Positions 1-62,367 of a stretch of 64,000 nt of DNA are shown in pieces. The stretch is from the IMG/VR virus record IMGVR_UViG_3300027816_000051, positions 62,001 through 126,000 of that record; one strand, 5' to 3'. Under the pieces are notes generated by a model that saw only the letters and a program-made list of their open reading frames with translations, was not told the origin of the DNA and made no database searches. Every line of letters starts with the position of its first letter. Position 1 is the first letter of the stretch. The position numbers were made by a program, and so were the translations under genes.

Positions 1-2304
1 ATTCTCACAATTCAAAGATGGGGTGAGTATACCAACAATTGGTCTTTTAGTGATGAAGATGGAAATATTAAGTTACCATTTATTGCTGTTGTAAGAAAAC
101 CTGAAGTTCAGTTAGGTACAAACCCATCTATTCAAAGAACTATTCCTGATAGAAGAGACTTTTTTTATGCATCGGTTCCGACTTGGGATGGAAATCAAAT
201 GGGTGCGGACATATACAAAATACCTCAACCAATTGCGGTTGATATTAGTTTTGATGTAACTATTGTTTGTACAAAATTTAGAGATATAAATAAGTTCAAT
301 CAAAAGGTTTTACAAAAGTTTTCATCTCGTCAAGCATACACTCGAGTAAAAGGTCATTATATCCCAATTGTATTAGATAGAATCGAAGATAATACTCCGA
401 TGGATACTTTAGATGGTAGAAGATTCTACATTCAAAATTACGGGTTTACAATGTTAGGATTCTTAATTGATGATGAAGAATTTGAAGTTTCTCCTGCAAT
501 TAACAGAAGTATTACCATGGTGGAACCCGATTTAAGGTCAATTCCATCTATAAAAAAAATTGAAAACTCAATAACAATATCATCAAATTATAGTAGTGGT
601 TCAATCGTTGCGGACTACACCGCAACCGCAACAAATAAGGTAGATAAGACGGTTGAAATTTCATTTACTGACACTTTATTAACTGTGACTGGTAGTTCAA
701 TATCAATTCCTGTTAAAATTTTTATTGAACCAAATCAATTAAGTGGTACTACACAATATACTGTCGATGGTACGTTTAGTAATTTAACTTTGGTTAATAA
801 TTTTAGTTCGGTAGATATTAATACGTCGTCTAAAACAAAATTTAGATATGATTTTACAACACAATCAACTTTTACAATACCAATAACACCGACCCCAACA
901 CCTTCAATAACACCATCTTCATCTGTAACACCATCAATAACCCCAACATCAACACCTACGGTTACCCCTACTTTAACCTCAACCTCTATTATCACCCCAA
1001 CCATAACTGTAACACCTTCAGTTACCCCCTCAGTAACACCGTCAATTACTCCGTCACTTACATCATCGGTTACACCAACCCCTACTTTAACCTCAACACC
1101 CACAGTTACCCCTTCGGTAACAATTGAGTCTTCACCGACACCATCACCAACTCAATCAGTAACACCATCCATTACTCCCAATAGTTCTGTCACACCATCG
1201 GCCACCCCAACACCATCATTGATGGTGGATGATAAACTATTAATTTCTGGTGGATTCTCATTATACAATGGCACATTATATAATGACATAATTAAATTAA
1301 ACTCAAATGGTTCAGTTGATAGTTCATTTAGCGGTGGAACCGGATTTGATAATTTCTTAGAAAATCACATAATATATAATAACAAAATTTACGGTGCGGG
1401 TTATTTTACAACATACAGTGGTGTATCGTCCAATTATATAATTAGATTAAACTTAGACGGTTCAATCGATAATACATTCAGTATCGGAACGGGATTCAAT
1501 AGTATCACAAAATTTGTTGTACCCCAATCTGATGGAAAACTATTAATCGGTGGATATTTTACATCATATAATGGCACGTCGGCGAATAAAATTATTAGGT
1601 TAAATTCTGACGGAACAATTGATAATACATTTAGTGGTTCAACGTCTACTACTTATGATGCAAACTCAACTGTTCAAGATGTTTCTTTACAATCAGATGG
1701 TAAAATGATTCTTTGTGGTAGTATGACCACAAGAAGAATTGAGAGACTTAATTCCGATAAGAGTCACGATTCTAGTTTTACAACTACAGTCGGTACGGGA
1801 TTTAATGCCTACACATACATGTCATCGGTACAATCAGATGGTAAGATTGTCGTTGGTGGAGATTTTACATCATATAGTGGAGTGACATCTAATAGAATAA
1901 TTAGATTAAATTCCGGAGGAACTATCGATGATACATTTATTATTGGAACCGGATTTAATAATAGTGTTTATTTTGTCTCGACTCTTTCAAGTGGTAAAAT
2001 AATGGTCGGGGGAGCTTTCACATCGTATAGTGGTGTAACATCTAATAGGATAGTTAGACTAAATTCTGATGGAACTATTGATAATACATTTAGTATTGGA
2101 ACCGGATTTAATAATCATGTACTCAGTATTGTTGTTCAAACAAATGGTAAAATACTAATTAGTGGTAATTTTACATCATATAACGGCACATCGGTAGGAA
2201 ACATTGTACGTTTATTTTCAGATGGAACTTTAGACACGACACTTAATACCGGTACAGGATTTGGTTCTGGAGCAACAATCACAACAGTAACCCCAATAAA
2301 TTAA
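1..2304 (+). CDS. 5'-truncated tail-completion/terminator-like (T4 gp15-like) protein fused to a Pro/Thr linker and a 7-repeat delta-60-type beta-propeller
   Basis: The frame is open from base 1 ([10 protein letters not shown]...), so the ORF-track start at 199 is internal. The gene lies upstream of the sheath gene. It has a TPS/TPT linker at about 880-1220, then seven repeats of the QSDGK-hhhGG-F-SY-G...RLNSDG-hD-TF type. The gp15-like call rests on position and fold-like pattern only. Confidence 0.6.
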
Positions 2305-2541: not shown

Positions 2542-2718
2542 TTAATCTCCATAGATATCTTTTTTCTTAGGTGAATCATTCACCTTTCCTGTTTTACAAA
2601 CTTCATCAATCCATTTCTGAACAACCTTATAAATTTTTAATCCATTTTTGTCGCAATATTCTTTTAACATTTGGTGGTGATTTTCACTAACCTTTATGTT
2701 TTTTAGGGTGTTTTTCAT
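2542..2718 (-). CDS. small ribbon-helix-helix-like DNA-binding protein (58 aa; absent from the ORF track)
   Basis: Manual translation gives MKNTLKNIKVSENHHQMLKEYCDKNGLKIYKVVQKWIDEVCKTGKVNDSPKKKDIYGD*. The pattern is a short strand (KNIKVS), helix, G turn, helix. It fills an otherwise empty gap and has TATTTAT 7 nt upstream on the minus strand. Confidence 0.7.
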   Translation of the reverse strand: MKNTLKNIKVSENHHQMLKEYCDKNGLKIYKVVQKWIDEVCKTGKVNDSPKKKDIYGD

Positions 2719-2725
2719 GATAAAG

Positions 2726-2816
2726 ATAAATATAGATACTAAAGGATAAATTAGTATCCATAAGTGCCATTTTTAAAAAAATCAAGGGAATCTTTGCTAA
2801 AAACAAAGATATTTAT
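2726..2816. promoter_or_regulatory. divergent promoter region with a TATTTAT motif on each strand and inverted repeats
   Basis: TATTTAT on - at 2726-2732 and on + at 2810-2816. Inverted repeats GATACTAA-N8-TTAGTATC (2735-2758) and ATCTTTG-N7-CAAAGAT (2790-2810). Confidence 0.5.
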
Positions 2817-2855: not shown

Positions 2856-5711
2856 ATGGCAAATTCAAATAGAGTTTTTGTATCTCCGGGTGTATATACA
2901 TCTGAAAAAGACTTAACATTCGTAGCACAAAGTGTTGGTGTGAGCACATTAGGTTTGGTGGGTGAAACCTTAAAAGGTCCCGCTTTTGAACCTGTATTAA
3001 TAACTAATTTTGACGAATTCAAGTCATATTTTGGGGGAACAAGTCCGTTAAAAGACAACAATAACAATCCAAAATATGAATTACCTTATTTCGCAAAATC
3101 TTATTTAGAAGAATCTAACCAAATGTTTGTAACAAGAATATTAGGTTTAACGGGTTATTTACCTGTCAAAACTTATGGTGTTAAAACAATTGGTGGGGTT
3201 ACATTGGGGGCTCTTAGTGGAACAACCACAAGTTTAACAATGTCAGCATCGACCACAACAATTACAGCAAGTACGATTTATAGTGAACTATCAGATAAAA
3301 TATCTGTAGATGGAAATTATATTACAGAATATATTGTAGCAAACTTTAGTGGTAACACATCATCTAACCATGGACAATGGTTTGTGATGGGTGAAGTACC
3401 AACTTCAGGAACAAGTGGTCAAACATCATCACTTGAAGAAGTTTCTCCTTTAACAGGTTTGAATAACGCAAGTAATTACAACAATAAGGAATGGTTCAAT
3501 AAACTTTGTAACACCACAGGTTCTGAAGTATATTCTTACTTATTTGTTTATAACAGCGGTGCGAGTAGATTTGATGTGACTAAGTACACATACTATGGAA
3601 CATTGAACACGGCGTATGATGGACAAGTGGTTTTAGCGTTCAGACCAAGAGGTTCTTACAATGGACAAACATTAAACTTGGAAACTACCGCAGATGTAAA
3701 TTTTGTGGTTACAGGTTCAGGAATCACTACAAATCCATTAGCTGAATTTACAGTTAATGTTACAGGTTCAACAAGTGGACCAAAATCATTCACTTGTAGT
3801 ATGGACTCTTCGTCATCAAAATATGTAACAAAAGTTTTTGGTACCGATGTTTATGACAAATTAAAAAGTGATGTACCTGTGTATGTTTTTGAATCTTATC
3901 CAAATTACTTACAAAGAGCATATGAACAAGGTTTAATTAGAGGTTTAAGTTTAACAGAAGTTTTCGAACATGTTGGTAACGACTTTAAAACATCTTGGGA
4001 TACCCCAATGACACCAACTGTTGTATCAGAGGTTAGAGGTGGTGAAGTTGATGATTTATTTGATGTAATCACAGTATCAGATGGTGATTCTGCAAACTAC
4101 GAAGTAAAAGTTTCAATTATTAATATTGATGTAAACACTGGTGACTTTGACTTAATCGTTAGAGACTTTAATGATACAGACGATAATTTAGTTGTACTTG
4201 AAAAATTTGGTAGATGTAATATGAATCCAGATTTACCAGGATATGTTGCTAAAAAAGTTGGTACATCTGATGGTGAATATGAATTACGTTCAAGATACAT
4301 TATGTTGTCAATGGCTGATAATCACCCAACCGACGCATATCCTGCAGGATTTAAAGGATTTACAAACAACACATCTTTTGGTTCAAGTACTTTAGGTTCG
4401 GTGATGTACAAGACTACATTCTATAACGCTGGTGATACTACATCTTATCAAGCCGATGGAACACCTGTTTTATCTTCAGGTGACAAAGTAAGAAGAACAT
4501 ACTTTGGTTTATCAAGTCCAACAAACGCAGTAACATACGATAGAGACTTGTTTAAATTCAAAGGAACATCAGCAGCTGGAACAACTAAGGGTTTCCACTT
4601 ATCAACAAACGCATCTACAATCACAGGAACAACCTTCTTAACCACGTCGTATGATTTAGAGGGTCAAACAGGTGGAGCGAATAACGTATTAACAAATATC
4701 AATTATCGTAAATTCACATTCGCAGCGGCTGGTGGATTTGACGGTTGGGATATCTACAGAAATGTGAGAACCTACGGTGATGGATACATCTTTGGTAAAA
4801 ATACTTACACAAGTGGTAACACTAATAATGGTGGTGTATTTAGTACAGTATCAGGAAACTCTGACTACTACGCTTACACTCAAGGTATTGATACCTTCGC
4901 AAACCCTGAAGCTGTTGATGTAAACATCTTCGCAACACCAGGTATCAACTTCTATGACCACAGTTCATTAACATCTTACGCAATTGATATGATTGAAGAA
5001 GATAGAGCGGATTCACTTTATGTGATTTCATCACCAAACTACGGTACAGCGGATGAAGTAATAGACGCTTTGGACGGCGTAGCAATTGATAGTAACTACT
5101 CAGCGGTTTACTGGCCTTGGATTCAAGTTAGAGACGCAGACAACGCTACACAATTATACTTACCACCAACAGGTGAAGTATTGAGAAATATAGCATTAAC
5201 AGATAACGTATCTTTCCCTTGGTTCGCGGTAGCGGGTTATTCAAGAGGTTTAGTAAACTCAATCAAAGCTTATAAGAAATTAACTTTGGATGAGAGAGAT
5301 GACCTTTACAAAGCGAGAATTAACCCTATCGCAACATTTGCGGATACCGGTACAATCATTTGGGGTAATAAAACACTTCAAGTACGTGAATCAGCTTTGG
5401 ATAGAATTAACGTAAGAAGATTACTGTTAAGAGCAAGAAAATTAATTTCAGCAGTAGCGGTAAGATTGTTATTTGAACAAAACGACGAACAAGTTCGTAA
5501 TGAGTTTTTGAGATTGGTTAACCCGATATTAGACGCAATTAAGAGAGAAAGAGGTTTGTATGAATTCCGTGTAACGGTTTCCAACGACCCTGAAGATATT
5601 GACGCTAATACTTTGAGAGGTAAAATTTACATTAAACCAACAAGAGCTCTTGAATTTATCGATGTTGAATTCATAATCACACCAACAGGAGCATCATTTG
5701 ATAATATCTAA
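2856..5711 (+). CDS. contractile tail sheath protein (T4 gp18-like)
   Basis: N-terminal VSPGVYTSEKD and GETLKGPAFEP. C-terminal YWPW, PWFAVAG, INPIATF, IWGNKTLQ, LDRINVRRLL, FEQND and IYIKPTRALEFI motifs, all typical of sheath proteins. Confidence 0.95.
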   Translation: MANSNRVFVSPGVYTSEKDLTFVAQSVGVSTLGLVGETLKGPAFEPVLITNFDEFKSYFGGTSPLKDNNNNPKYELPYFAKSYLEESNQMFVTRILGLTGYLPVKTYGVKTIGGVTLGALSGTTTSLTMSASTTTITASTIYSELSDKISVDGNYITEYIVANFSGNTSSNHGQWFVMGEVPTSGTSGQTSSLEEVSPLTGLNNASNYNNKEWFNKLCNTTGSEVYSYLFVYNSGASRFDVTKYTYYGTLNTAYDGQVVLAFRPRGSYNGQTLNLETTADVNFVVTGSGITTNPLAEFTVNVTGSTSGPKSFTCSMDSSSSKYVTKVFGTDVYDKLKSDVPVYVFESYPNYLQRAYEQGLIRGLSLTEVFEHVGNDFKTSWDTPMTPTVVSEVRGGEVDDLFDVITVSDGDSANYEVKVSIINIDVNTGDFDLIVRDFNDTDDNLVVLEKFGRCNMNPDLPGYVAKKVGTSDGEYELRSRYIMLSMADNHPTDAYPAGFKGFTNNTSFGSSTLGSVMYKTTFYNAGDTTSYQADGTPVLSSGDKVRRTYFGLSSPTNAVTYDRDLFKFKGTSAAGTTKGFHLSTNASTITGTTFLTTSYDLEGQTGGANNVLTNINYRKFTFAAAGGFDGWDIYRNVRTYGDGYIFGKNTYTSGNTNNGGVFSTVSGNSDYYAYTQGIDTFANPEAVDVNIFATPGINFYDHSSLTSYAIDMIEEDRADSLYVISSPNYGTADEVIDALDGVAIDSNYSAVYWPWIQVRDADNATQLYLPPTGEVLRNIALTDNVSFPWFAVAGYSRGLVNSIKAYKKLTLDERDDLYKARINPIATFADTGTIIWGNKTLQVRESALDRINVRRLLLRARKLISAVAVRLLFEQNDEQVRNEFLRLVNPILDAIKRERGLYEFRVTVSNDPEDIDANTLRGKIYIKPTRALEFIDVEFIITPTGASFDNI

Positions 5712-5717
5712 TAAAAA

Positions 5718-5742
5718 GGGGAGGGGAAACCCTCCCTATTTT
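5718..5742 (+). terminator. intrinsic terminator after the sheath gene
   Basis: GGGAGGG-GAAA-CCCTCCC hairpin followed by TATTTT and preceded by an A run. Confidence 0.75.
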
Positions 5743-5743
5743 A

Positions 5744-5759
5744 TGTTCCACGTGGAACA
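5744..5759. promoter_or_regulatory. parS-type centromere palindrome
   Basis: TGTTCCACGTGGAACA is a perfect 16-bp palindrome (18 bp with flanks). It matches the bacterial chromosomal parS consensus TGTTNCACGTGNAACA and is intergenic. Confidence 0.75.
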
Positions 5760-5839
5760 TTATAATATAGTGTGACCTACGGAATTACCAAATATAAAAA
5801 AAATAAAATTATAAATTACCCAGTATATGCACCAGTATT

Positions 5840-5936
5840 CTAGTTCTAGTTCTAGTTTATTTTTATCTAGTTTATTTCTTTATAGTTATTCTAGTTTCTT
5901 TAATCTAGTTCTTAATTTACTAGCATCTAGTACTAG
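5840..5936. repeat. CTAG/TCTAGT short-repeat array in a T-skewed non-coding tract
   Basis: CTAG occurs at 5840, 5846, 5852, 5867, 5891, 5905, 5920, 5927 and 5933 (9 copies in 97 bp). I found no credible ORF on either strand. Confidence 0.85.
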
Positions 5937-5943
5937 TATGGAA

Positions 5944-5972
5944 AAAATACGAAATAATTTTCACAAAATCAA
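5944..5972 (-). promoter_or_regulatory. candidate sigma70-like promoter pointing into the CTAG array
   Basis: The minus strand reads TTGATT-N17-TATTTT (cttgattttgtgaaaattatttcgtattttt). Confidence 0.35.
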
Positions 5973-6059
5973 GTATTGAGAAGATTTTTTTTGTTTTTTC
6001 ATATACAACATATTTATAAGAAAGATTAAAAATAAAAAAATTAAAAAACAAATATTGAC

Positions 6060-6548
6060 ATGGCAGATTTATTAATGAAAATGCCGGTTCCTTACGAACC
6101 GAAGAGAGTTAACCGATTCATACTTAGATTCCCATCATCATTGGGTATTAACGAGTGGTACGTAACCTCAAGTGCAAGACCTAGTGCAAAAATTAACTCA
6201 GTTGCAATTCCTTTCATCAACACATCAACATACGTAGCTGGTAGATTTGAATGGAATGAAATAAGAGTAACCTTCAAAGACCCTATTGGTCCTTCAGCGG
6301 CACAAGCATTGATGGAGTGGTTCCGTCTACACGCTGAATCAGTTACAGGTCGTATGGGTTACGCAGCTGGTTACAAAAAAGATATTGAATTAGAAATGTT
6401 AGACCCAACGGGGGTTGTGGTTGAAAAATGGATACTTCAAGGTTCTTTCATAACCGACTTAAACTTTAACGAACTTGATTATTCAAGAGATGATATTGCA
6501 TCTATCACATGTTCGTTAAGAATGGATAGATGTATATTAGTTTACTAA
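6060..6548 (+). CDS. tail tube protein (T4 gp19-like)
   Basis: 162 aa, directly after the sheath gene. Motifs include EPKRVNRF, YVAGRFEW, YKKDIELEMLDPTGVVVEKW and ELDYS. Confidence 0.92.
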   Translation: MADLLMKMPVPYEPKRVNRFILRFPSSLGINEWYVTSSARPSAKINSVAIPFINTSTYVAGRFEWNEIRVTFKDPIGPSAAQALMEWFRLHAESVTGRMGYAAGYKKDIELEMLDPTGVVVEKWILQGSFITDLNFNELDYSRDDIASITCSLRMDRCILVY

Positions 6549-22985: not shown

Positions 22986-23984
22986 ATGGCAATCAAGAAA
23001 AAAGAATTCGATTATATATCCAAATTCTCATCAAAAACAAAATATAAGGATGAAAACTTTTATTATTGTGGTGAGGCGTTTAACAACGCATGTGGATTAC
23101 CAGGACCCGTGATGGGAGGTATTAATATGTTCTTAGGACATACAAACTCATCAAAAACAACCGCAATGATTTTAGCTGCGGTTGATGCACAAAAGAAAGG
23201 CCATTTACCCGTACTTATTATCACTGAAAGAAAATGGAAATGGGAACACGCAATTGAACTTGGTTTCCAAGCTGAAAAAGATGCGAATGGCGAGTGGACA
23301 GGTGATTTTATTTTCAATGATTCATTTGACTATATTGAACAAGCAACCGATTTTATAAATGACATCATTGATGCTCATGAAAAAGGTGAAATCCCAAGAC
23401 ACATTTTATTTTGTTGGGATTCAATTGGTTCAATACCATGTAAGATGACTTTTGATGGTAAAGGTGGTAAACAACACAACGCAAGTGCATTATCCGATAA
23501 AATTGGTATGGGTATTCACTCAAGAATTACCAAATCAAAAAAAGAAGATTACCCATCTAAAGACTCGTCATATTATTTGACAATGGTTGTGGTGAATCAA
23601 CCATGGGTAGAATTACCTGACAATCCAATGGGTCAACCTGAAATCAAACCAAAAGGTGGTGAAGCATTAAAATTAGCGTCTTCACTTATCTTCTTATTTG
23701 GTAATCAGAAAAAATCAGGTATCAACCACATTGATGCAACCAAAGACGGTAGAAAAATTGTTTACGCTGTTAGAACCAAAATTTCAATCCTTAAAAACCA
23801 CGTTAATGGATTAGGTTACAAAGACGGTAAAGTTATCGTTGTCCATAATGGATATATTGCCGACACCAAAGAAGCTTTGGAGTCGTATAAAAAAGAATAT
23901 TCAAGTTTTTGGAAAGAAAAATTAGGGTCTAGCGACTTTGATTTAGCGGAATCAACAACTTACGATTTCGAAGAAGAAGATTAA
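22986..23984 (+). CDS. uvsX: RecA/UvsX-like recombinase
   Basis: Variant Walker A GHTNSSKTT, Walker B ILFCWDS, VVVNQ and PKGGEAL. The start is placed at ATG 22986 (MAIKKK), downstream of the hairpin. Confidence 0.85.
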   Translation: MAIKKKEFDYISKFSSKTKYKDENFYYCGEAFNNACGLPGPVMGGINMFLGHTNSSKTTAMILAAVDAQKKGHLPVLIITERKWKWEHAIELGFQAEKDANGEWTGDFIFNDSFDYIEQATDFINDIIDAHEKGEIPRHILFCWDSIGSIPCKMTFDGKGGKQHNASALSDKIGMGIHSRITKSKKEDYPSKDSSYYLTMVVVNQPWVELPDNPMGQPEIKPKGGEALKLASSLIFLFGNQKKSGINHIDATKDGRKIVYAVRTKISILKNHVNGLGYKDGKVIVVHNGYIADTKEALESYKKEYSSFWKEKLGSSDFDLAESTTYDFEEED

Positions 23985-24015
23985 TTTTTGTTTAACCCTA
24001 TAAGAGTGATGATTA

Positions 24016-25038
24016 ATGTCTAATGTATTATTGGTAGATGGTGACAATTTACTTACTATTGGTTTTTTTGGATTAAAAAATCACTTTTATAAGGGGGAAC
24101 ATATTGGTGGGATATATCATTTTATAAACACCTTAAGACGAACAATTGAAATCCATCATTTGGATAAGATTGTCGTTTTTTGGGATGGACAAGATGGTTC
24201 TATAACAAGAAAAAGGTTCTACCATCAATACAAAGAGAATAGAAAATCTCGTATCAGGTCTGAAGAAGAATTACATTCTTACGGAAAACAAAGAAACAGA
24301 ATTAAACAATATCTTGAAGAACTATTTGTTAGACAAGGTGAATATGAATTCTGTGAGTCAGACGATTCAATCGCATATTATGTTCAAAACTCACCAAAAG
24401 AAAACAAAATAATTTTTTCTTCAGATGGTGATTTGACTCAATTAGTTTCAGAAAATACCAAACTCTTTAATCCCTCACACAGTAAAATATACCAACCAAA
24501 TGATATGTTCGTTTATGACCATGAACAAATTCTTATACAGAATATAAAATTGGTCAAGATGATTTGTGGTGACCCATCGGATAATATTGCGGGCATCAAA
24601 AATTTAGGTGTCAGGAGATTAATTTCATTAGTTCCTGAAATTAAAACCGAAGAGATTACCGTTGAATTTATTCTTGAAAGATTTAACAATTTATTTGAGG
24701 AAGACAACGATAATCGTCTTGTAAAGAATCTTCTGACAGGTGTTACCAAATATGGGATATTAGGTGAGGAATTTTTTGATGTCAATAGTCGTATTGTAAG
24801 TCTTGATAATCCTTTCTTAACTGATGAAGCAAGGGAATCTATAACTTCATTAATAAACGATTTGATTGACCCTGAAGGTCGGTCATATAAAAACACCATG
24901 AAGATGATGATGGAAGATGGTATATTTTTATTACTTCCAAAATCGGATGATGCGTGGATAAACTTCCTCAATCCATTTTTAAGATTAACAAGAAAAGAAA
25001 AGAATAAAAAATTAATTAAAATCAAAAACAATGAGTAA
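24016..25038 (+). CDS. 5'-3' exonuclease / flap endonuclease (T4 RNase H-like)
   Basis: LLVDGDN, VFWDG, YKENR, ESDDSIA, SSDGDLTQL and GDPSDNIAGIKNLG motifs. Confidence 0.92.
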   Translation: MSNVLLVDGDNLLTIGFFGLKNHFYKGEHIGGIYHFINTLRRTIEIHHLDKIVVFWDGQDGSITRKRFYHQYKENRKSRIRSEEELHSYGKQRNRIKQYLEELFVRQGEYEFCESDDSIAYYVQNSPKENKIIFSSDGDLTQLVSENTKLFNPSHSKIYQPNDMFVYDHEQILIQNIKLVKMICGDPSDNIAGIKNLGVRRLISLVPEIKTEEITVEFILERFNNLFEEDNDNRLVKNLLTGVTKYGILGEEFFDVNSRIVSLDNPFLTDEARESITSLINDLIDPEGRSYKNTMKMMMEDGIFLLLPKSDDAWINFLNPFLRLTRKEKNKKLIKIKNNE

Positions 25039-45858: not shown

Positions 45859-45977
45859 TAAAAACTGTAAAAATAGACGTTGACAATACCCGAATAAATG
45901 AGTATATTTTTATAATAAAAATAGATATAGATAAGACTGTAGATTTAAATGGCATTAATAAAAATAAACACAGGTAA
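45855..45977 (+). CDS. possible 40-aa bridging mini-ORF
   Basis: ATGA overlap with the upstream stop. [40 protein letters not shown] overlaps the start of the giant gene. Confidence 0.3.
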   Translation: MIKTVKIDVDNTRINEYIFIIKIDIDKTVDLNGINKNKHR

Positions 45978-48900
45978 TTTTGATGGTGAAATTGGTGTTA
46001 TCACATTTTATCCTTGTACTGGCGGTACCTTGAATTTAGGTACTGTCGTGATGCCATATTATTACGACACAAACTACTACTTAGGTACTTACTCAGTTTA
46101 TTTTCCGTCACTTGATAAAACTTGTGTGGCTGAGATTCCTTGCCCTACACCTTCACCTACACCTTCACCAACACTTACACCATCATTAACACCAACACCA
46201 ACAACCTTTACTTCAAATACCCCAACCCCAACAGTTACCAAAACCCCTACTGTTACACCTACGGTTACAAAAACACCTACTGTTACCCCAACCAATACTA
46301 TCACTCCAACAAATACTCCTACGAATACCGTAACTCCGACTAATACTCCAACAAACGAGCCTACAGTTACCCCAACTGAAACTCCTACAGTTACTCCAAC
46401 TAACACAGTAACTCCAACCAATACCCCAACAAATACCCCAACGGTTACCCCAACTGAAACTCCTACAGTTACCCCAACTAACACAGTAACTCCAACCGAA
46501 TCACCAGCCAACACACCTACTGTAACTCCTACGAATACAGTTACACCAACCGAGACACCAACTGTTACTCCGACCGAAACTCCAACTGTAACCCCAACAA
46601 ATACGGTAACCCCAACCAATACACCAACTGAAACACCTACCAACACCCCAACAAATACAGTTACCCCTACCGAAACTCCAACTGTAACTCCAACAAATAC
46701 GGTAACCCCTACCGAAACACCTACCAATACACCAACTCATACAGTAACCCCTACCGAAACACCAACCAATACCCCAACTAATACACCGACTGAAACACCC
46801 ACTAACACCCCAACAAATACTGTTACCCCAACTAATACACCAACCGAAACACCAACCGAAACACCAACCAATACCCCAACCAACACCGTAACTCCAACTG
46901 TTACCCCAACTGTTACCCCAACTGTAACTCCAACCAATACTGTTACCCCAACTAATACACCAACCGAAACACCAACCGAAACACCAACCAATACTCCAAC
47001 CAACACCGTAACCCTAACCGTTACCCCTACCGAAACACCAACCAACACCCCAACTAATACTCCGACTAACACAGTAACACCAACACTGAGTCCAACCGTT
47101 ACCCCTACCGAAACACCTACCAATACCCCAACCAACACCATAACACCAACTAACACTCCGACTAATACCTCAACTGTAACTCCAACCAATACTGTAACTC
47201 CAACCAATACACCCACTGTAACACAAACTGAAACACCTACCCTAACACCAACAAATACTGCAACCGTTACACCAACTCAAACCCCAACCAATACTCCTAC
47301 CAATACTGTTACACCAACGGTTACCCCAACTAACACTCCAACTGTAACTCCAACAAATACGGTAGCTCCAACTAATACACCTACAAATACACCAACCGAA
47401 ACACCAACAAATACCCCCACCAACACACCAACAAATACTCCCACAGAAACACCAACACTTACACCAACCAACACCGTAACCCCTACCAATACAGTCACAC
47501 CAACCAATACTGTTACAGTGACTCCAACAGAAACTGTGACACCAACTAATACACCTACAAACACCCCAACTAATACACCAACAAATACGGTTACACCTAC
47601 GAATACTCCAACCAACACAGTAACTCCAACAAATACTCCAACTAACACTCCAACATTAAGTCCTACCAATACCGTAACTCCTACCAACACCCCAACAAAC
47701 ACACCGACGAATACAGTAACTCCAACTCAGACACCTACAAATACTCCTACAAATACCGTTACACCAACCAATACCCCAACCAATACCCCAACCAACACCG
47801 TAACTCCAACAAACACTCCTACCAACACTCCTACAAACACTCCCACAAATACCGTAACTCCAACCAACACCGTAACTCCGACTAATACACCTACAAACAC
47901 ACCAACGAATACTGTGACTCCTACATTGAGTCCTACGGTAACACCAACTAACACCGTAACACCAACCAATACTCCAACCAATACACCTACCAATACTGTG
48001 ACTCCTACATTGAGTCCTACGGTAACACCAACTAACACCGTAACACCAACCAATACTCCAACTAACACGCCGACCAACACTCCTACTAACACTGTAACAC
48101 CAACATTGAGTCCAACAGTGACTCCAACCAATACAGTTACCCCCACAAACACCCCGACAAATACTGTAACTCCAACCAATACTGTAACTCCAACAAATAC
48201 ACCAAGTGTAACTGTGACGGTTTCACCAACACCAGCACCTTCTTGTGACATTGATTATACAATGTTACCCTCACCAACTCCAACGAGCACCCCAACACCC
48301 ACCAATACTCCAACGGTAACACCAACCAACACTGTAACACCATCCGTTACATTAACCAATACTCCCACAAACACACCAACCAATACAGTAACTCCTACTA
48401 ACACCCCAACTAATACACCAACAAAAACTGTTACACCAACTTTAACTCCAACAAATACTCCAACTAATACTGTAACACCAACCAATACACCAACAAACAC
48501 TCCTACCAATACAGTTACTCCTACATTGAGTCCAACAGTTACTCCTACCAATACTGTTACCCCAACCAATACTCCTACCAATACCCCAACCAATACAGTT
48601 ACACCTACATTGACTCCAACAGCGACCCCAACCAACACCGTAACCCCTACAAATACCCCAACATTAAGCCCCACCAATACTCCAACCAACACCGTAACCC
48701 CTACAAATACTGTAACACCAACGAATACCCCAACCAACACTCCGACAAACACCCCAACAAACACTGTAACACCAACCAACACTCCAACAAACACTGTAAC
48801 ACCGACCAATACTCCAACAAATACCCCTACTAATACTGCTACTCCTACAAATACACCAACTAATACTCCTACCAATACGGTAACCCCTACAAATACACCA

Positions 48901-51900
48901 ACTAACACTCCTACCAATACGGTATCCCCAACACTGACACCTACTAACACCCCTACGAACACCGTAACACCAACAAACACACCAACTAACACACCAACTA
49001 ATACTGTAACACCAACTAACACTCCTACCAACACCCCAACCAACACAGTTACTCCTACCAATACGCCAACTAATACTCCTACCAATACGGTAACGCCAAC
49101 ATTGAGTCCAACAGTGACTCCAACCAATACCGTTACACCAACTCAAACCCCTACAAATACCCCAACTAACACCGTAACACCAACCAATACACCTACGAAT
49201 ACCCCCACTAATACTCCAACAAATACCGTAACCCCAACAAACACGCCTACGAATACACCAACAGTAACCCCTACCAATACCGTAACCCCAACAAATACAC
49301 CGACGGTAACTCCGACCAATACAGTCACACCAACTAATACACCAACCAACACTCCTACCAATACGGCTACCAATACAGTTACTCCTACCAATACACCCAC
49401 AAATACACCAACAAATACGGTTACACCAACTAACACTCCTACTAATACTCCAACAAATACCGTAACACCGACACTGACACCTACAAATACCCCGACAAAC
49501 ACTCCAACCAATACAGTTACTCCAACCAATACTGTAACTCCTACCAACACCCCTACCAACACCCCAACAAATACTCCAACAAATACAGTCACCCCAACTA
49601 ATACTCCAACCAATACTGTCACCCCTACCAATACTCCTACAAACACCCCCACCAATACTGTCACCCCTACCAATACTCCTACCAATACTCCTACAAATAC
49701 AGTAACTCCAACTAACACCCCAACAAATACTCCAACAAATACAGTCACCCCAACCAATACTCCTACCAATACGCCCACCAATACTGTCACCCCTACCAAT
49801 ACTCCTACCAATACTTCTACAAATACAGTAACTCCAACTAATACTCCTACCAATACGCCTACTAATACTGTAACTCCAACCAACACCCCAACTGTAACTC
49901 CTACCAATACTGTTACACCAACAAACACTCCTACTAACACACCAACCAATACTGTTACACCAACAAACACTCCTACTAACACACCAACCAATACGGTAAC
50001 TCCTACCAACACCCCAACTAACACACCAACCAATACGGTAACTCCTACCAACACCCCAACTAACACCCCAACAAATACTGTTACACCAACAAATACTCCC
50101 ACCAATACCCCAACAAACACGGTGACTCCAACAAACACTCCTACTAACACCCCAACAAATACAGTAACACCAACATTGAGTCCTACAGTAACTCCTACGA
50201 ACACAGTAACTCCTACAAATACTCCCACAAACACTCCGACCAACACCGTTACACCAACAAATACCCCAACCAATACCCCGACAAATACAGTAACCCCAAC
50301 TAACACACCTACCAACACTCCAACTAATACAGTAACTCCCACATTAAGTCCAACTGTGACTCCTACTAATACTGTGACTCCTACAAACACTCCTACCAAC
50401 ACACCAACAAATACAGTTACACCTACATTGAGTCCAACAGTGACTCCAACCAGCACCGTAACCCCAACTAATACGCCAACATTAAGTCCTACCAATACTC
50501 CAACCAACACTGTTACTCCTACAAATACCGTTACACCAACCAATACACCTACCAATACCCCAACAAACACCGTAACCCCAACACTAACCCCAACTAACAC
50601 TCCAACCAATACTCCTACAAATACGGTATCTCCAACCAACACCGTAACCCCAACAAATACACCAACTAACACTCCAACCAATACTCCCACCAACACTGTT
50701 ACTCCAACCAACACCCCGACCAACACTCCGACTAATACAGTAACTCCTACCAATACCCCAACAAATACCCCAACAAATACAGTTACACCTACATTGAGTC
50801 CAACGGTGACTCCTACTAATACTGTAACTCCTACCAACACTCCGACCAACACACCAACCAATACTGTTACACCTACATTGAGTCCAACGGTGACTCCTAC
50901 TAATACTGTTACACCCACTAACACGCCAACTAACACTCCTACTAACACTGTAACACCAACTCAGACTCCCACGAACACGCCTACAAATACAGTAACACCT
51001 ACTAACACACCTACTAATACACCAACAAATACGGTAACACCAACCAACACCCCTACGAACACGCCGACTAACACCCCAACCAATACAGTCACACCAACTA
51101 ATACCGTAACTCCAACAAATACGCCAACCAATACTCCTACCAATACGCCAACCAATACCGTAACACCAACTCAGACACCGACAAATACCCCAACAAAAAC
51201 TGTTACACCAACATTGAGTCCGACTGTGACACCAACAAATACTGTTACTCCAACCAATACCCCCACCAATACTCCAACTAACACAGTAACCCCAACCAAT
51301 ACTCCAACTGTAACACCTACGAATACTGTTACACCTACAAATACACCGACGAATACACCAACCAATACGGTAACTCCAACCAACACCCCAACCAATACCC
51401 CAACTAGTACTGTTACACCAACATTAAGCCCGACACTAACACCAACCAATACAGTAACTCCAACATTGAGTCCGACTGTAACTCCAACAAGAACGGTTAC
51501 ACCTACTTTAACACCAACCAATACACCGACAAATACGGTAACCCCTACAAATACTCCCACCAACACCCCAACAAACACTCCAACCAATACAGTCACCCCA
51601 ACAAACACCGTAACACCAACCAACACCCCCACAAACACTCCAACCAATACTCCAACAAACACCGTAACACCAACCAACACACCAACCAAGACTGTAACTC
51701 CAACCAATACCCCAACCAATACTCCAACTAATACAGTAACCCCAACTAATACACCAACCAATACTCCAACGAACACCGTAACTCCAACCAACACCCCAAC
51801 CAACACTGTAACTCCAACAAATACACCTACAGTTACCCCGACTAACACAGTAACACCTACACTGAGTCCGACTGTAACCCCTACGAATACAGTTACACCA

Positions 51901-54900
51901 ACTCAGACACCTACAAATACTCCAACTAACACCGTAACTCCTACCAACACACCAACTAACACACCAACTAACACTGTTACACCCACAAATACACCAACCA
52001 ATACAGTTACTCCTACCAATACACCTACTAACACTCCAACTAACACAGTAACCCCTACCAATACCCCTACGAACACTCCTACTAATACAGTAACTCCTAC
52101 AAACACCGTAACACCAACCAACACACCAACCAATACTCCAACCAACACTGTCACCCCTACATTGAGTCCTACGGTAACTCCTACGAACACAGTTACCCCT
52201 ACTAACACACCGACTAAGACCGTGACTCCCACATTGAGTCCGACTGTGACTCCTACAAATACTGTTACACCAACTCAAACCCCTACGAATACACCAACTA
52301 ATACAGTTACACCAACTAATACACCTACAAACACCCCAACAAATACAGTTACACCTACAAATACCCCAACTAACACTCCAACCAATACAGTAACCCCTAC
52401 ACTGAGTCCAACCGTAACACCAACTAATACTGTCACACCCACGAATACACCAACCAATACCCCTACGAATACTGTAACCCCTACCAACACCCCTACTAAT
52501 ACTCCTACAAATACGGTTACACCAACTAACACTCCAACAAGAACGGTTACACCTACTTTAACACCAACCAATACACCGACAAATACGGTAACCCCTACAA
52601 ATACTCCCACCAATACCCCAACAAACACGGTGACTCCTACATTAACACCAACTGTAACTCCTACAAATACCGTAACACCAACCAATACTCCTACAAATAC
52701 TCCTACTAACACAGTAACACCTACCAATACCCCTACAAACACACCAACAAACACTGTAACTCCAACTAACACCCCTACTAATACTCCGACGAATACGGTA
52801 ACTCCAACCAATACCCCAACAAACACACCTACCAACACCGTAACACCTACAAATACTCCTACTAAAACTGTGACTCCCACATTGAGTCCAACAGTTACAC
52901 CTACCAACACCGTAACACCTACAAATACTCCCACAAATACCCCTACTAACACAGTAACACCAACAAATACACCAACCAACACTCCAACTAATACCGTTAC
53001 CCCAACTAACACACCTACAAATACACCAACAAATACTGTGACTCCTACATTGAGTCCAACAGTTACACCTACCAACACCGTAACACCTACAAATACCCCT
53101 ACCAACACCCCAACAAATACAGTAACACCTACATTGAGTCCGACTGTGACTCCAACTAACACCGTTACGCCAACTAACACACCTACCAACACTCCAACTA
53201 ACACCGTAACCCCTACCAGCACCCCCACAAGAACCGTTACACCTACATTAACTCCAACCAATACCCCTACTAATACCGTAACCCCAACAAATACCCCAAC
53301 CAATACCCCTACTAATACCGTAACCCCAACAAATACCCCAACAAACACTCCAACTAATACCGTAACCCCAACAAATACCCCAACAAACACTCCAACTAAT
53401 ACCGTAACCCCTACCAACACCCCCACAAGAACCGTTACACCTACATTAACTCCAACCAACACACCAACTAATACTGTAACCCCAACCAACACTCCTACAA
53501 ACACTCCAACGAATACAGTTACACCAACCAATACACCAACTAACACCCCAACCAACACTGTAACTCCAACATTGAGCCCTACAGTGACTCCCACTAATAC
53601 AGTTACACCAACTAACACACCAACCAATACCCCAACCAACACCGTAACTCCAACAAACACCCCTACTAAAACTGTAACTCCCACATTGAGCCCTACGGTA
53701 ACCCCAACAAACACTGTTACTCCAACCAACACCCCAACTAATACTCCAACTAATACTGTTACTCCAACCAACACCCCAACCAACACCCCAACTAATACTG
53801 TTACACCGACCAACACACCAACGAATACTATAACTCCTACTAATACTCCTACCAAAACTGTTACACCAACTCTAACCCCAACGAATACACCGACCAATAC
53901 TCCTACAAACACAGTAACCCCAACCAATACCGTAACACCAACTAACACTCCAACCAACACTGTAACTCCAACTAATACACCAACCAACACCCCAACTAAT
54001 ACTCCGACAAACACTGTTACGCCAACCAATACACCAACAAAAACTGTCACACCAACTTTAACCCCAACCAACACCGTAACACCAACCAATACCCCGACTA
54101 ATACACCTACAAATACTGTTACTCCAACTAATACACCTACAAACACTCCAACCAACACCGTAACCCCAACCAATACACCAACTAATACGGTGACTCCCAC
54201 ATTGAGTCCTACGGTAACTCCTACAAATACTGTAACCCCTACTAATACTCCTACCAAAACTGTTACACCAACTCTAACCCCAACGAATACTCCTACCAAT
54301 ACTGTAACCCCTACCAATACTCCTACCAATACTGTAACCCCTACCAATACTCCTACCAATACTCCAACAAATACTGTTACCCCAACTCAGACACCTACTA
54401 ACACTCCAACGAATACAGTCACACCAACCAACACACCAACTAATACTGTAACTCCTACATTGAGTCCTACGGTAACTCCGACCAATACGGTAACCCCAAC
54501 AAACACACCAACTAACACACCAACTAATACTGTAACGCCAACTAATACACCAACAAAAACTGTTACACCAACTTTAACTCCAACCAATACCCCAACTAAT
54601 ACTGTAACACCTACCAATACACCAACAAACACTGTTACGCCAACTTTAACTCCAACCAATACCCCGACCAATACCCCAACAAATACCGTTACTCCAACCA
54701 ACACAGTTACCCCGACCAATACCCCAACTAAGACAGTCACCCCAACTCAGACTCCCACCAATACTCCAACCAATACCCCCACAAACACTGTAACTCCAAC
54801 AAACACTGTTACGCCAACAAATACTCCAACTAATACGGTAACACCGACTAACACTGTAACGCCGACCAATACCGTAACCCCCACTAACACTGTAACTCCA

Positions 54901-60900: not shown

Positions 60901-62367
60901 GTTACACCAACTTTAACTCCTACATTAACACCAACAAGCACAGTAACACCATCACCATCCTTACAGGTTGGTTATGTTTATTTATTACCATGTTGTGATG
61001 GTGGTATTTTAGGTAATACTATTTCTTATTTAAGTATAACAACTAATTTGACCTATGTTCAAAGCGGTATTTCACAAGGTCAAACTATTGTTATAAATGG
61101 ATGTTGTTATTTTGTTGAAGGTTATAGTCAAACCTACTCACCACCAAACTTTAGTGGGGTTGACGGGTATTATCCACCATCATCATTTAGTGTTGATACA
61201 TGTGAAACATGTATTGGAGCTAACCCATGCGCCACTTGGATTTTCGATTTACAAAGATGTGGATGTTGTGGTACAACAGGACAATATACAATTCAATTTG
61301 GTTGTCAAAATGGATTTAACCCAAATCTTTTAGTAAACCGTTATATATCAATTAATGGTTGTTGTTATTTTGTTACAAACTCAGTCGGACCAGGAGTACC
61401 TGGTTCCGCAATCACTGCGTATGGTACATACAATACATGTACTGAATGTGAAACTTATCACCCTTGTCCTTCACCAACCCCAACAGTTACACCAACAGTT
61501 ACACCAACTTTAACCCCAACAAAAACACCGACAAATACACCAACAAGGACAGTTACTCCAACTTTAACACCAACCAATACTCCTACAAATACACCAACCA
61601 AGACTGTAACTCCAACCTTTACCCCTACAAATACACCAACCAAGACTGTAACTCCAACCTTTACCCCTACAAATACTCCAACCAAGACTGTAACTCCAAC
61701 CTTTACCCCTACAAATACTCCAACAAGGACAGTTACTCCAACTTTAACACCAACCAATACTCCTACAAATACACCAACCAAGACTGTAACTCCAACAAAC
61801 ACTCCAACAAACACTCCAACACCATCTCCGGTTTCAAATCCGTCATCAACCCCAACCCCAACTCCAACTCCGACCCCAACCCCAACTCCACCATGTGTTT
61901 GTGAGTCATATATTATTACAGGATTAGGACCTGGTAATATAGTTAACTATACCACTTGTTGCGGTGGAGGAACACCCACAGAAATACTTGACCCAAATGT
62001 GTACCCAGCAAGTGGTACAATTGAGATATGTTCATGTAGTATTCCAAGTGTATTAGGTCCTTATGGTGGGGAGATAACGTATGATGGTGCTTGTGGTGAT
62101 TGTTTGTGTACAGACTTTTTTGTTGATATTAATGATTTAACAGCCTCAGATGATAATCAAGTATACTTTGCATACCAATGTTGTGATGGTACATTCACAA
62201 CACAAGGTTATAACGCCCCTGGTAATTATAGCGTTTGTCTTATGAGAGTGACAAATGTGTTTATATTGTTTAGAGGAAACTTCGTACCACCAATATATAC
62301 TTCGCAATATACATACGGTACTGGTTGTGGTGATTATTGTAACACATTTTGTGGAGAAGCATGTTAA
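45949..62367 (+). CDS. giant mucin-like Thr/Pro-repeat protein (5472 aa) with Cys-rich terminal modules; putative virion fibre
   Basis: Uninterrupted 16.4-kb frame. It has a unique N-domain of about 65 aa, about 4750 aa of TPTN/TVTP repeats, then Cys-rich modules separated by shorter PT linkers. It lies right after the baseplate block. The function is inferred. Confidence 0.8.
46144..60390 (+). repeat. degenerate coding tandem repeat (12- and 18-nt units encoding TPTN and TPTNTV)
   Basis: ACN-CCN-ACN-AAY and ACN-GTN units with varied third positions. The + strand is extremely A/C-rich and G-poor. Confidence 0.95.

What the first reader, a model, noticed from the sequence alone, without database searches (positions are those of the whole stretch)
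5840..5936. CTAG-dense iteron-like array
Seen: 9 CTAG palindromes, with 6-bp tandem units TCTAGT at the left end, 6-7-bp spacing at the right end and 14-24-bp spacing in the middle. They are embedded in a T-rich top strand. Such density is far above chance for a 4-mer. Inference: the array could be a binding platform for an initiator, helicase loader or terminase, or a decoy or modification target for a CTAG-specific enzyme.
Basis: partly seen in the sequence, partly recalled or inferred. Interest (0 to 1): 0.6.

Follow-up and report, generated by a model that had tools for sequence, protein, structure and literature searches.

The report
CTAG-box array beside phage parS
A real, genome-unique cluster of nine CTAG palindromes lies between the tail-sheath and tail-tube genes of an uncultured 288-kb phage. 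It is conserved in dozens of relatives, usually next to a perfect host-type parS site, and is most likely a docking array for a small DNA-binding protein, but its function is untested.

Summary
Nine CTAG lie at 5840-5936. The 288-kb genome has only 146 CTAG (observed/expected 0.37), and no other 100-bp window holds three.

The array sits in the 348-bp spacer between the tail sheath and tail tube genes of a T4-like jumbo phage. Its early promoters are of the Bacteroidota type.

In 62 distinct related loci the same spacer carries 0-11 CTAG boxes, a 23-fold enrichment. The boxes are kept while the AT-rich spacers drift. Copy number and spacer strand bias change between lineages.

The overlapping 50-codon ORF is not conserved, and no RNA signal was found. 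I therefore read the array as a double-stranded-DNA protein-binding platform.

- An exact chromosomal parS (TGTTCCACGTGGAACA, 5744-5759) is unique in the genome. A parS-like palindrome lies 45-49 bp from the first array word in most relatives.
- A conserved 58-aa ribbon-helix-helix protein (2542-2718, minus strand) resembles ParG and omega, which coat arrays of short boxes. It is the best candidate binder, but this is unproven.

Rivals are a P1-pac-like site, origin iterons, an RNA element and neutral repeats. The closest analogue is the TP228 parH/OF tetramer-box array. I rate it a new variant of a known kind.

The parts
2542..2718 (-). 58-aa ribbon-helix-helix (RHH)-like protein gene, divergent from the sheath gene. 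Candidate binder of the boxes (inferred, not shown).
   Evidence: Weak but concordant hits to three RHH families: RepB-RCR_reg 0.0038, ParG 0.012, Omega_Repress 0.062. PHROG 876 'transcriptional repressor' 3e-5 and Arc-like repressors. The profile against PDB has ParG 1p94 on top and aligns strand, helix and helix over residues 5-43. Present in 47 of 48 related loci with enough flank. About 978 clusters in the large protein collection, some carrying PF10723. The late-promoter word TATTTAT on its strand lies at 2726-2732.
5718..5747 (+). Intrinsic terminator after the sheath gene (8-bp stem with 6 G-C pairs, followed by a T run)
   Evidence: A hairpin plus T run is present at this place in most relatives.
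5744..5759 (.). Exact 16-bp chromosomal-type parS palindrome TGTTCCACGTGGAACA
   Evidence: Zero mismatches to the parS pattern. Identical to P. aeruginosa parS2/parS3 and the P. putida consensus. Unique in G000, G001 and G002. A parS-like palindrome is present in 43 of 62 related loci, 45-49 bp before the first array word in 34 of 40. The same 18-mer, including the phage's flanking bases, occurs in Bacteroidota and many other bacterial genomes.
5820..5838 (+). Two CCAGTAT words (5820-5826 and 5832-5838) that open the array. The word is the reverse complement of ATACTGG and is a variant box.
   Evidence: A CC(A/G)G(T/A)AT word is the conserved left boundary in most loci.
5840..5936 (.). Nine W-CTAG-W boxes in AT-rich spacers (the finding), plus one decayed box at 5882-5885
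5940..5973 (+). Conserved A-rich box (AAAAAATACGAAA ... TTGACA-like word ... ATCAAG) abutting the promoter-proximal end of the array. Function unknown.
   Evidence: Alignment of 56 distinct upstream regions. The element is not coding. AAAATACGAAA occurs only twice in the genome.
6011..6018 (+). Late-promoter word TATTTATA of the tail tube gene, 49 nt before the ATG
   Evidence: TATTTAT is 12-fold enriched upstream of genes (44 of 143 upstream regions) and lies 11-50 nt before many start codons, including sheath and tube. It is conserved in all relatives and upstream of the tube gene in Flavobacterium phage immuto and Microcystis phage Mel-JY01.
6060..6548 (+). Tail tube gene (gp19-like), the gene the cassette travels with
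   Evidence: Pfam Phage_T4_gp19. tblastn hits to annotated tail tube genes. The cassette stays upstream of this gene where the left neighbour differs (L053/L054, L025/L027).

Best explanation
The CTAG cluster is a cis-acting element of double-stranded DNA. It is an array of short palindromic boxes (W-CTAG-W; clade consensus ATA-CTAG-TAT, with variant words ATACTGG and CCAGTAT) set in AT-rich spacers on a roughly 15-bp lattice.

I infer that dimers of a small sequence-specific DNA-binding protein coat it cooperatively. The best candidate is the conserved 58-aa ribbon-helix-helix protein encoded 3.1 kb upstream, whose gene carries the late-promoter word. Its nearest recognisable relatives (ParG, omega, CopG/RepB-type regulators) all bind arrays of 4-7-bp boxes.

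The array is the variable middle of a single-copy cassette, in this order:
- the sheath terminator;
- a host-type parS;
- the array;
- a conserved A-rich box;
- the late promoter of the tail tube gene.

The promoter-proximal edge of the array is fixed about 80-100 bp upstream of the promoter, and the distal edge grows and shrinks. The likeliest job of the resulting nucleoprotein complex is to set or time transcription from the tube promoter region. It may act together with host ParB loaded at the neighbouring parS.

What is shown: the array is real, unique and conserved; its boxes are kept; it is non-coding; it tolerates either orientation; it has the neighbours listed above. What is inferred: that a protein binds it, which protein, and what the complex does.
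For: Uniqueness and non-randomness.

The only CTAG triple cluster in a second, complete 310-kb relative (G001) is in the same spacer.

Conservation: 57 of 62 distinct related loci have 2 or more CTAG at -300..-100 from the tube ATG. Density there is 20.7 per kb against 0.91 per kb in the rest of the loci. No other 4-bp palindrome is enriched more than 3.6-fold.

Boxes versus spacers: 87% against 68% identity among close relatives, with six of the nine boxes kept in nearly all of them.

Flanks of CTAG are essentially never C or G (at most 2%), and the words CTGG and CCAG carry the same ATA/TAT flanks.

Pairwise box distances peak at 6, 15, 30, 45 and 60 bp. Arrays expand as 30-31-bp double units (L072, L029).

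The spacer strand bias flips in L025-L029, which argues for function on duplex DNA.

The element is not a gene: the frame through it is open for 10-30 codons in most relatives and often has no ATG.

RHH candidate.

The cassette stays with the tube gene when the left neighbour changes.

Fixed proximal edge and late promoter.

Precedent: the TP228 parH centromere and OF operator are arrays of about 100 bp made of degenerate tetramer boxes in AT-rich spacers. They are coated cooperatively by ParG dimers and tolerate box inversion (PMC3130281).
Against: The RHH assignment rests on sub-threshold matches. The monomer fold was poor and the dimer test gave no verdict.

The conserved palindrome next to the RHH gene's own start is (A/G)GATA-N6-TATC(T/C), not CTAG, so its cognate site may be different.

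Long-tailed RHH variants coincide with large arrays, but this traces to a single branch of the tree and is not evidence.

Box spacing (6 and 15 bp) differs from the regular 8-bp register of ParG sites.

Other late genes have the same promoter word without any array, so it is unclear why the tube gene would need one.

Five relatives (L040, L046, L070, L074, L076) have no CTAG at all and only related words, or none.
Confidence: 0.45

Rival explanations
1. Packaging recognition site of the P1 pac type. Clusters of hexamers that each hold a 4-bp palindromic methylation site flank a cleavage region. The terminase binds the hexamers, and methylation by a phage methyltransferase times the cut.
For: In the window the layout is four boxes on the left (three contiguous TCTAGT plus one), three on the right and two in the middle. 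This recalls P1's HEX4/HEX3 hexamers TGATCA/G within 161 bp (PMC10028697). The array is single-copy in the genome. The phage encodes two orphan DNA methyltransferases of unknown specificity, one of the Dam class although the genome has no GATC.
Against: The two-cluster layout is not conserved, and most relatives have only 2-4 boxes. The large terminase gene is 44 kb away, at G000 23.9 kb. T4-type phages are generally held to package without a specific site (general knowledge). The element is tied to the tube promoter in rearranged loci.
Confidence: 0.12
2. Iterons of a replication origin, bound by a phage initiator next to an AT-rich unwinding region.
For: The element is single-copy and repeat-rich in an AT-rich intergenic region. 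[quoted passage not shown] Bacterial parS sites are typically origin-proximal (PMC7022226).
Against: The boxes are 4-10-bp palindromes with variable number and spacing, not oriented repeats of 12-22 bp. No initiator or replication gene is adjacent. There is no change of transcription strand or GC skew at the site. The array lies inside the late structural module.
Confidence: 0.1
3. The array works as RNA: a small RNA, a leader or an antisense transcript whose repeated CUAG motifs bind a protein or pair with each other.
For: CUAG is self-complementary, and the left and right clusters can pair. The minus strand of 5700-5960 folds better than shuffles (z -2.45).
Against: The plus-strand fold is not better than shuffles (z -1.3). 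The minus-strand signal comes from the terminator and the parS palindrome. There is no Rfam match. The array lies between a terminator and a promoter, with no recognisable promoter in front of it on either strand. Spacer strand composition flips between lineages, and spacing is 15-16 nt with no conserved pairing partner.
Confidence: 0.07
4. No function of its own. It is slippage-prone low-complexity DNA that drifts in a tolerant spacer.
For: Copy number varies from 0 to 11, even among close relatives. Arrays grow by tandem duplication of 6-bp and 30-31-bp units. Large arrays arose at least three times. Several contigs break at or near it, as expected for a repeat.
Against: A tetramer that the genome otherwise avoids is enriched 23-fold at the same place across lineages with 85-100% tube identity. 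The cores are kept while the spacers change. The boundary words and the distance to parS are fixed.
Confidence: 0.08
5. Decoy, sink or modification target for a CTAG-specific restriction or modification enzyme.
For: CTAG is depleted genome-wide (observed/expected 0.37), and the phage carries methyltransferases.
Against: A cluster of cleavable sites would be lethal rather than protective. 137 other CTAG sites persist, whereas GATC is absent altogether, so CTAG is not under the same absolute avoidance. Variant boxes CTGG and CCAG occupy equivalent positions, which a strict CTAG enzyme would not read.
Confidence: 0.03

Closest known systems
TP228 parH centromere and OF operator, bound by the ribbon-helix-helix protein ParG (PMC3130281)
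   Same: A tract of about 100 bp with 8-12 degenerate 4-bp boxes separated by AT-rich spacers. It tolerates inverted boxes and changes in number, and a small RHH protein is encoded in the neighbourhood. The phage protein's best PDB sequence match is ParG.
   Different: The box is CTAG (palindromic), not ACTC. The lattice is 6 and about 15 bp, not a regular 8 bp. No ParA/ParF-type ATPase is encoded in the phage. The element is in a lytic-type T4-like jumbo phage upstream of a tail gene, not in a plasmid partition operon. Binding is untested.
Bacteriophage P1 pac site (HEX4/HEX3 hexamers carrying GATC; PMC10028697)
   Same: Seven to nine hexamers built around a 4-bp palindrome, clustered at the two ends of a tract of about 100-160 bp, single-copy in the genome. 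The phage has its own methyltransferases.
   Different: The palindrome is CTAG, not GATC. The site is intergenic and far from the terminase gene. The two-cluster layout is not conserved in relatives. No evidence of cleavage or methylation.
Chromosomal ParB-parS, and ParB-family clamps that act with a second operator-binding protein (KorB-KorA of RK2; the latter recalled from memory)
   Same: An exact chromosomal parS lies 81 bp from the array, at a fixed 45-49 bp in most relatives. A second, distinct set of operator-like boxes sits between it and a promoter.
   Different: The phage has no canonical ParB: no HTH_ParB domain, only a ParB/Srx-fold protein below Pfam's threshold. So a host ParB would have to be used. 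In 17 of the 19 related loci without a parS-like site the CTAG boxes persist. No functional data.
T4 oriE iterons (PMC3016281)
   Same: A cluster of short repeats at a syntenic place in related T4-type phages, with function still undefined.
   Different: [quoted passage not shown] Here the boxes are palindromic, unevenly spaced and sit in the tail module.
E. coli trp repressor operators (CTAG-centred ACTAGT half-sites; recalled from memory, a lead only)
   Same: The recognition word is centred on CTAG, and tandem sites are known.
   Different: No Trp_repressor-family protein is encoded in the phage. The spacing differs.

Membership tests
RHH-bound tetramer-box array (TP228 parH/OF type) | Array of about 100 bp made of short degenerate boxes interspersed with AT-rich spacers | tested here: met
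   Nine CTAG boxes in 97 bp. Flanks are A or T only, and the spacers are AT-rich.
RHH-bound tetramer-box array (TP228 parH/OF type) | Regular 8-bp register (4-bp box plus 4-bp spacer) | tested here: not met
   Box-to-box distances peak at 6, 9, 15 and 30 bp.
RHH-bound tetramer-box array (TP228 parH/OF type) | A cognate ribbon-helix-helix protein is encoded nearby and binds the boxes | tested here: inconclusive
   An RHH-like 58-aa gene lies 3.1 kb upstream and is conserved in 47 of 48 loci. All family matches are below curated cut-offs. The fold and dimer predictions were uninformative. Binding is not testable here.
RHH-bound tetramer-box array (TP228 parH/OF type) | Partner ParA-superfamily ATPase (ParF) | tested here: not met
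   No AAA_31 or CbiA match in the 288-kb genome at E <= 0.01. All 14 control genomes gave matches.
P1-type pac site | Two clusters of hexamers containing a 4-bp palindrome, flanking a central region | tested here: inconclusive
   The layout is present in the window (4 left, 3 right) but absent in most relatives, which have 2-4 boxes.
P1-type pac site | Lies in or beside the terminase genes | tested here: not met
   The Terminase_6N match is at G000 23,914-24,654, 44 kb from the array.
P1-type pac site | Mature DNA ends, or the start of a headful series, at the site, with the boxes methylated | not testable with these tools
The methyltransferases are present but their specificity is unknown.
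Iteron-type replication origin | Oriented direct repeats of about 12-22 bp at regular spacing | tested here: not met
   The boxes are 4-10-bp palindromes. Number and spacing vary, and the spacer orientation flips between lineages.
Iteron-type replication origin | Adjacent initiator gene, or a strand or skew switch | tested here: not met
   The neighbours are the sheath and tube genes. Gene strand and GC skew do not change at 67.8 kb.
Chromosomal parS (the neighbouring palindrome 5744-5759) | 16-bp palindrome matching tGTTNCACGTGAAACa | tested here: met
   Exact TGTTCCACGTGGAACA, identical to published parS sites. Relatives vary between the GTTCCAC and GTTTCAC half-sites, both of which are known half-parS words.
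Chromosomal parS (the neighbouring palindrome 5744-5759) | A ParB with the parS-reading HTH domain is available | tested here: inconclusive
   None is encoded in the phage. The same 18-mer is found in genomes of Bacteroidota (Chitinophaga, Algibacter, Mucilaginibacter, Bacteroidales) and many other phyla, so a host ParB could read it. The host itself is only inferred, from its promoters.
Protein-coding small ORF (5827-5979) | Open frame, start codon and amino-acid-level conservation in relatives | tested here: not met
   The frame is open for only 10-30 codons in most relatives, often without an ATG. Box spacing of 15-16 nt breaks any frame.

The most novel reading that the evidence does not exclude
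The cassette is a composite phage 'hub'. Host ParB-CTP clamps load at the phage's exact parS. They are then stopped, captured or handed over at the neighbouring CTAG-box array, which is coated by the phage's late RHH protein. This would either couple a host sliding clamp to control of the tail-gene late promoters (a sequence-addressed counterpart of the clamp-activated late transcription of T4; PMC2988020), or recruit host condensin to organise or individualise the 288-kb phage DNA before packaging. A lytic-type jumbo phage using a host chromosome-segregation site together with its own box array would be a new kind of phage-host interface.
Probability: 0.12. Interest if true: 0.85.

Novelty: new variant of a known kind. 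Interest (0 to 1): 0.58.

Why it matters
If the array is a protein-coated operator or centromere-like platform, it defines a conserved cis-regulatory cassette in a large, entirely uncultured clade of freshwater jumbo phages. No GenBank phage has the RHH protein, and the best tube match there is 42% identical. It also offers a small protein-DNA pair that can be tested in vitro without culturing the phage.

The neighbouring exact parS raises a wider question that I found no paper addressing in the library searched: why do lytic-type phages carry the host's chromosome-segregation site? The same 16-mer occurs in more than 120 other viral contigs. CTAG is among the rarest tetramers in many genomes, so a selected cluster of it is also a useful case for what the tetramer is read as.

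Tried and rejected
1. Small ORF 5827-5979 (TCT AGT reads as Ser-Ser). Rejected: the frame is not conserved.

2. Known RNA family. None found: the best Rfam hits are far below gathering scores and lie on the terminator.

3. RNA structure. Not better than shuffles on the plus strand. The minus-strand signal is due to the terminator and the parS palindrome.

5. Similar DNA in GenBank phages. Only a 110-bp tube-gene match. The nearest cultured relatives (Microcystis phage Mel-JY01, Flavobacterium phage immuto) have 45-95-bp sheath-tube spacers with no array.

6. AlphaFold monomer of the RHH protein. Poor (pLDDT 64, a single helix), as I would expect for a fold that forms only as a dimer.

7. Homodimer prediction. 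'No answer' (0.36 against the mark of 0.42). This is not evidence either way.

8. Correlation of RHH tail length with array size (Spearman 0.67). Rejected as evidence: the long tail arose once on the tree, giving a single independent pair.

9. ParA-type ATPase, TrpR and HTH_ParB in the phage. None found.

10. CTAG arrays next to parS in bacterial genomes or in other viral contigs. Not seen, apart from this clade itself.

11. A Bacteroidota-type promoter on the minus strand of the A-rich box. The match lacks the conserved final G of TAnnTTTG, so it was not adopted (and inspection).

12. Literature on CTAG clusters in phages or host-type parS in lytic phages. Nothing relevant in the library searched.

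Full report
**Context**

The window is bases 62,001-126,000 of a single 288,260-bp viral contig with 33.5% G+C. IMG/VR classes it as linear and 92% complete.

The finding lies in the 348-bp spacer between two genes:
- a 951-aa tail sheath gene (2856-5711; Pfam Phage_sheath_1 and Phage_sheath_1C);
- a 162-aa gp19-like tail tube gene (6060-6548).

A T4-type baseplate gene follows them. The nearest cultured relatives of the tube protein are Microcystis phage Mel-JY01 (42% identity), Flavobacterium phage immuto (37%) and Rhodothermus phage RM378. The phage therefore belongs to an uncultured T4-like jumbo lineage.

Two promoter classes can be read from the genome.
- Many minus-strand genes at 212-235 kb are preceded by TTTG(G)-N19-21-TAnnTTTG. 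This is the classical Bacteroidota promoter, as far as I recall it.
- TATTTAT(A) is enriched 12-fold upstream of genes. It lies 11-50 nt before the start codons of structural genes, including sheath and tube.

I infer a Bacteroidota host and take TATTTATA to be the late promoter. The same word precedes the tube genes of the Flavobacterium and Microcystis phages.

**The observation**

Nine CTAG start at 5840, 5846, 5852, 5867, 5891, 5905, 5920, 5927 and 5933.

The genome as a whole avoids CTAG: 146 sites against 399 expected from a Markov model. No other 100-bp window has even three. Chance is excluded: the probability is at most 1e-5 genome-wide, even under the most generous null model.

**Conservation**

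A scan of IMG/VR with the tube protein confirmed 596 related stretches, and the best 80 (85-100% identity) were fetched. Among 62 distinct upstream regions:
- 57 have two or more CTAG between -300 and -100 of the tube ATG, and 43 have three or more;
- CTAG density there is 20.7 per kb, against 0.91 per kb in the rest of the same loci, a 23-fold enrichment;
- the next most enriched 4-bp palindrome is TATA at 3.6-fold, which reflects AT-richness.

In a complete 310-kb relative (G001), the only CTAG triple cluster in the genome is again in this spacer.

Among close relatives the box positions are kept while the spacers change: 87% against 68% identity. This figure has the caveat that the aligner anchors on the boxes.

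The bases next to CTAG are A or T, essentially never C or G. The clade consensus is ATA-CTAG-TAT. Equivalent positions sometimes carry ATACTGG or CCAGTAT, which have the same flanks.

Box-to-box distances peak at 6, 15, 30, 45 and 60 bp. Arrays expand as tandem 30-31-bp double units, for example 11 boxes in L072. On a tree built from sheath and tube DNA, large arrays arose at least three times.

The promoter-proximal edge of the array is fixed: the last box lies about 80-100 bp upstream of TATTTATA. The distal edge moves.

**What it is not**

The 50-codon ORF that runs through the array (TCT AGT reads as Ser-Ser) is an accident of the window's lineage. In most relatives the frame is open for only 10-30 codons, often with no start codon, and 15-16-nt box spacing cannot keep a frame.

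No Rfam family matches. The plus strand does not fold better than shuffled controls (z -1.3). The minus-strand signal (z -2.45) comes from the terminator and a neighbouring palindrome.

The strand bias of the spacers flips between lineages: T-rich on top in the window, A-rich on top in L025-L029. An RNA element would not tolerate that, but a duplex-DNA site made of palindromic boxes would.

GC skew and gene strand do not switch at this site. The large terminase gene is 44 kb away.

**The surroundings**

The spacer is a cassette of five parts.

1. A good intrinsic terminator follows the sheath gene (5718-5747).

2. At 5744-5759 lies TGTTCCACGTGGAACA.
   - It is letter for letter the perfect chromosomal parS of Pseudomonas aeruginosa (parS2/parS3) and P. 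putida, and it fits the general consensus TGTTNCACGTGAAACA.
   - It is unique in this genome and in two relatives.
   - A parS-like palindrome (up to 2 mismatches) is present in 43 of 62 related loci. The variation is mainly between the GTTCCAC and GTTTCAC half-sites, both described as half-parS words.
   - It lies 45-49 bp before the first CCAGTAT-type word of the array in 34 of 40 cases, and 75-76 bp in the window's subgroup.
   - The same 18-mer, with the phage's own flanking bases, occurs in genomes of many phyla, including Bacteroidota: Chitinophaga with four copies in 3.6 kb, Algibacter, Mucilaginibacter and Bacteroidales.
   - The phage encodes no ParB with the parS-reading HTH domain. 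It has only an early-expressed 251-aa ParB/Srx-fold protein elsewhere in the genome (PHROG 12305, 6e-22; Pfam ParB_N below cut-off). That protein is conserved in G001 at 45% identity.
   - Nineteen related loci lack the parS-like site, and 17 of these still have boxes. So the array does not strictly depend on parS.

3. The array itself, opened by two CCAGTAT words at 5820-5838.

4. A conserved A-rich box at 5940-5973.

5. The tube late promoter at 6011-6018.

Where another gene is inserted to the left (L053/L054, L025/L027), the cassette stays with the tube gene. The distant cultured relatives have 45-95-bp spacers and no cassette.

**A candidate binder**

Immediately upstream of the sheath gene, on the other strand, lies a 58-aa ORF (2542-2718). 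The evidence that it is a ribbon-helix-helix (RHH) protein is as follows:
- It gives weak but concordant matches to three RHH families: RepB-RCR_reg, ParG and the omega repressor.
- It matches PHROG 876 'transcriptional repressor' and Arc-like repressors.
- As a profile of 23 homologues, its top PDB match is ParG. The alignment runs through the beta-strand and both helices.
- It is present in 47 of 48 related loci with enough flank.
- Lys6, Asn7 and Lys9 in the putative DNA-reading strand are invariant.
- It belongs to about 978 clusters of unnamed proteins, some with a precomputed PF10723 hit.
- It has no homologue in GenBank phages.
- Its start is preceded by the late-promoter word on its own strand.

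ParG, omega and CopG-type proteins all coat arrays of 4-7-bp boxes. [quoted passage not shown] That description also fits this array.

The caveats are serious:
- All the family matches are below curated cut-offs.
- The monomer model was poor, and the dimer test gave no verdict.
- The conserved palindrome beside the gene's own start is (A/G)GATA-N6-TATC(T/C) rather than CTAG.
- The phage has no ParA-type ATPase.
- The coincidence of long-tailed RHH variants with large arrays reduces to one branch of the tree.

**Verdict**

The array is real, non-random, unique in the genome and under selection at the level of its boxes.

The best-supported reading (confidence 0.45) is a duplex-DNA docking array for a small dimeric DNA-binding protein. 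It forms part of a single-copy regulatory or architectural cassette in front of the tail tube late promoter. The RHH protein is the leading but unproven candidate binder, and a host-type parS is a frequent partner element.

It works like an RHH tetramer-box operator or centromere. It is not a member of the ParFG-type partition family: it has no ParA and a different register.

The rivals are a P1-pac-like site (0.12), origin iterons (0.10), neutral repeats (0.08), an RNA element (0.07) and a restriction or modification decoy (0.03). None can be excluded without reads or bench work. The remaining probability covers binders or roles I have not thought of.

Noticed in passing
window 5744-5759: Exact 16-bp chromosomal parS (TGTTCCACGTGGAACA) in a T4-like jumbo phage. 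It is unique in the genome and conserved in 43 of 62 related loci. The phage has no canonical ParB, so a host ParB would have to read it. The same 16-mer occurs in more than 120 other IMG/VR contigs of very different G+C content.
   Followed up: partly
window 2542-2718 (-): Conserved 58-aa ribbon-helix-helix-like protein, divergent from the sheath gene, with the late-promoter word before its start. The family has about 978 unnamed clusters and no GenBank phage homologue.
   Followed up: partly
window 2744-2759 and 2791-2809: Two further conserved palindromes lie in the RHH-sheath spacer. GGATA-N6-TATCC sits beside the RHH start. TCTTTG-N7-CAAAGA abuts the sheath late promoter TATTTAT (2810-2816). 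Both look like operators.
   Followed up: no
window 45949-62367 (+): One 5472-aa ORF, of which about 5,300 residues are [12 protein letters not shown]-type repeats (Thr 45%, Pro 20%, Asn 14.5%). It has a short N-terminal domain and a Cys-rich C-terminal domain of about 170 aa. It explains the GC skew of -0.73 over 14 kb.
   Followed up: partly
whole genome G000 (window = 62001-126000): GATC is completely absent (0 against about 795 expected). Yet the phage encodes a Dam-class (D12) methyltransferase at 150,847-151,572 and an N6_N4 methyltransferase at 166,488-167,213. Relatives do contain GATC, at 1.19 per kb.
   Followed up: partly
G000:C1:220900-221655 (-) = L084:958-1713: 251-aa ParB/Srx-fold protein with a DGQHR motif. 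PHROG 12305 'ParB-like partition protein' 6e-22; Pfam ParB_N and GmrSD_N below cut-off. It sits behind a Bacteroidota-type early promoter and is conserved in G001 at 45% identity.
   Followed up: partly
G000 212-235 kb (early genes) and throughout the genome: Early promoters are TTTG(G)-N19-21-TAnnTTTG(TA), which points to a Bacteroidota host. The late-promoter word TATTTATA often lies only 11-14 nt before the ATG, implying very short or absent leaders.
   Followed up: partly
L053, L054, L025, L027 (upstream of the cassette): In some relatives an extra gene or fragment sits between the sheath gene and the cassette. In L053/L054 it is on the reverse strand, with its own TATTTATA-like word. It may be a mobile insertion.
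   Followed up: no
window 199-2304 (+): 701-aa protein with six DUF5122 beta-propeller repeats and a Thr/Pro/Ser-rich linker, lying just upstream of the tail module.
   Followed up: no
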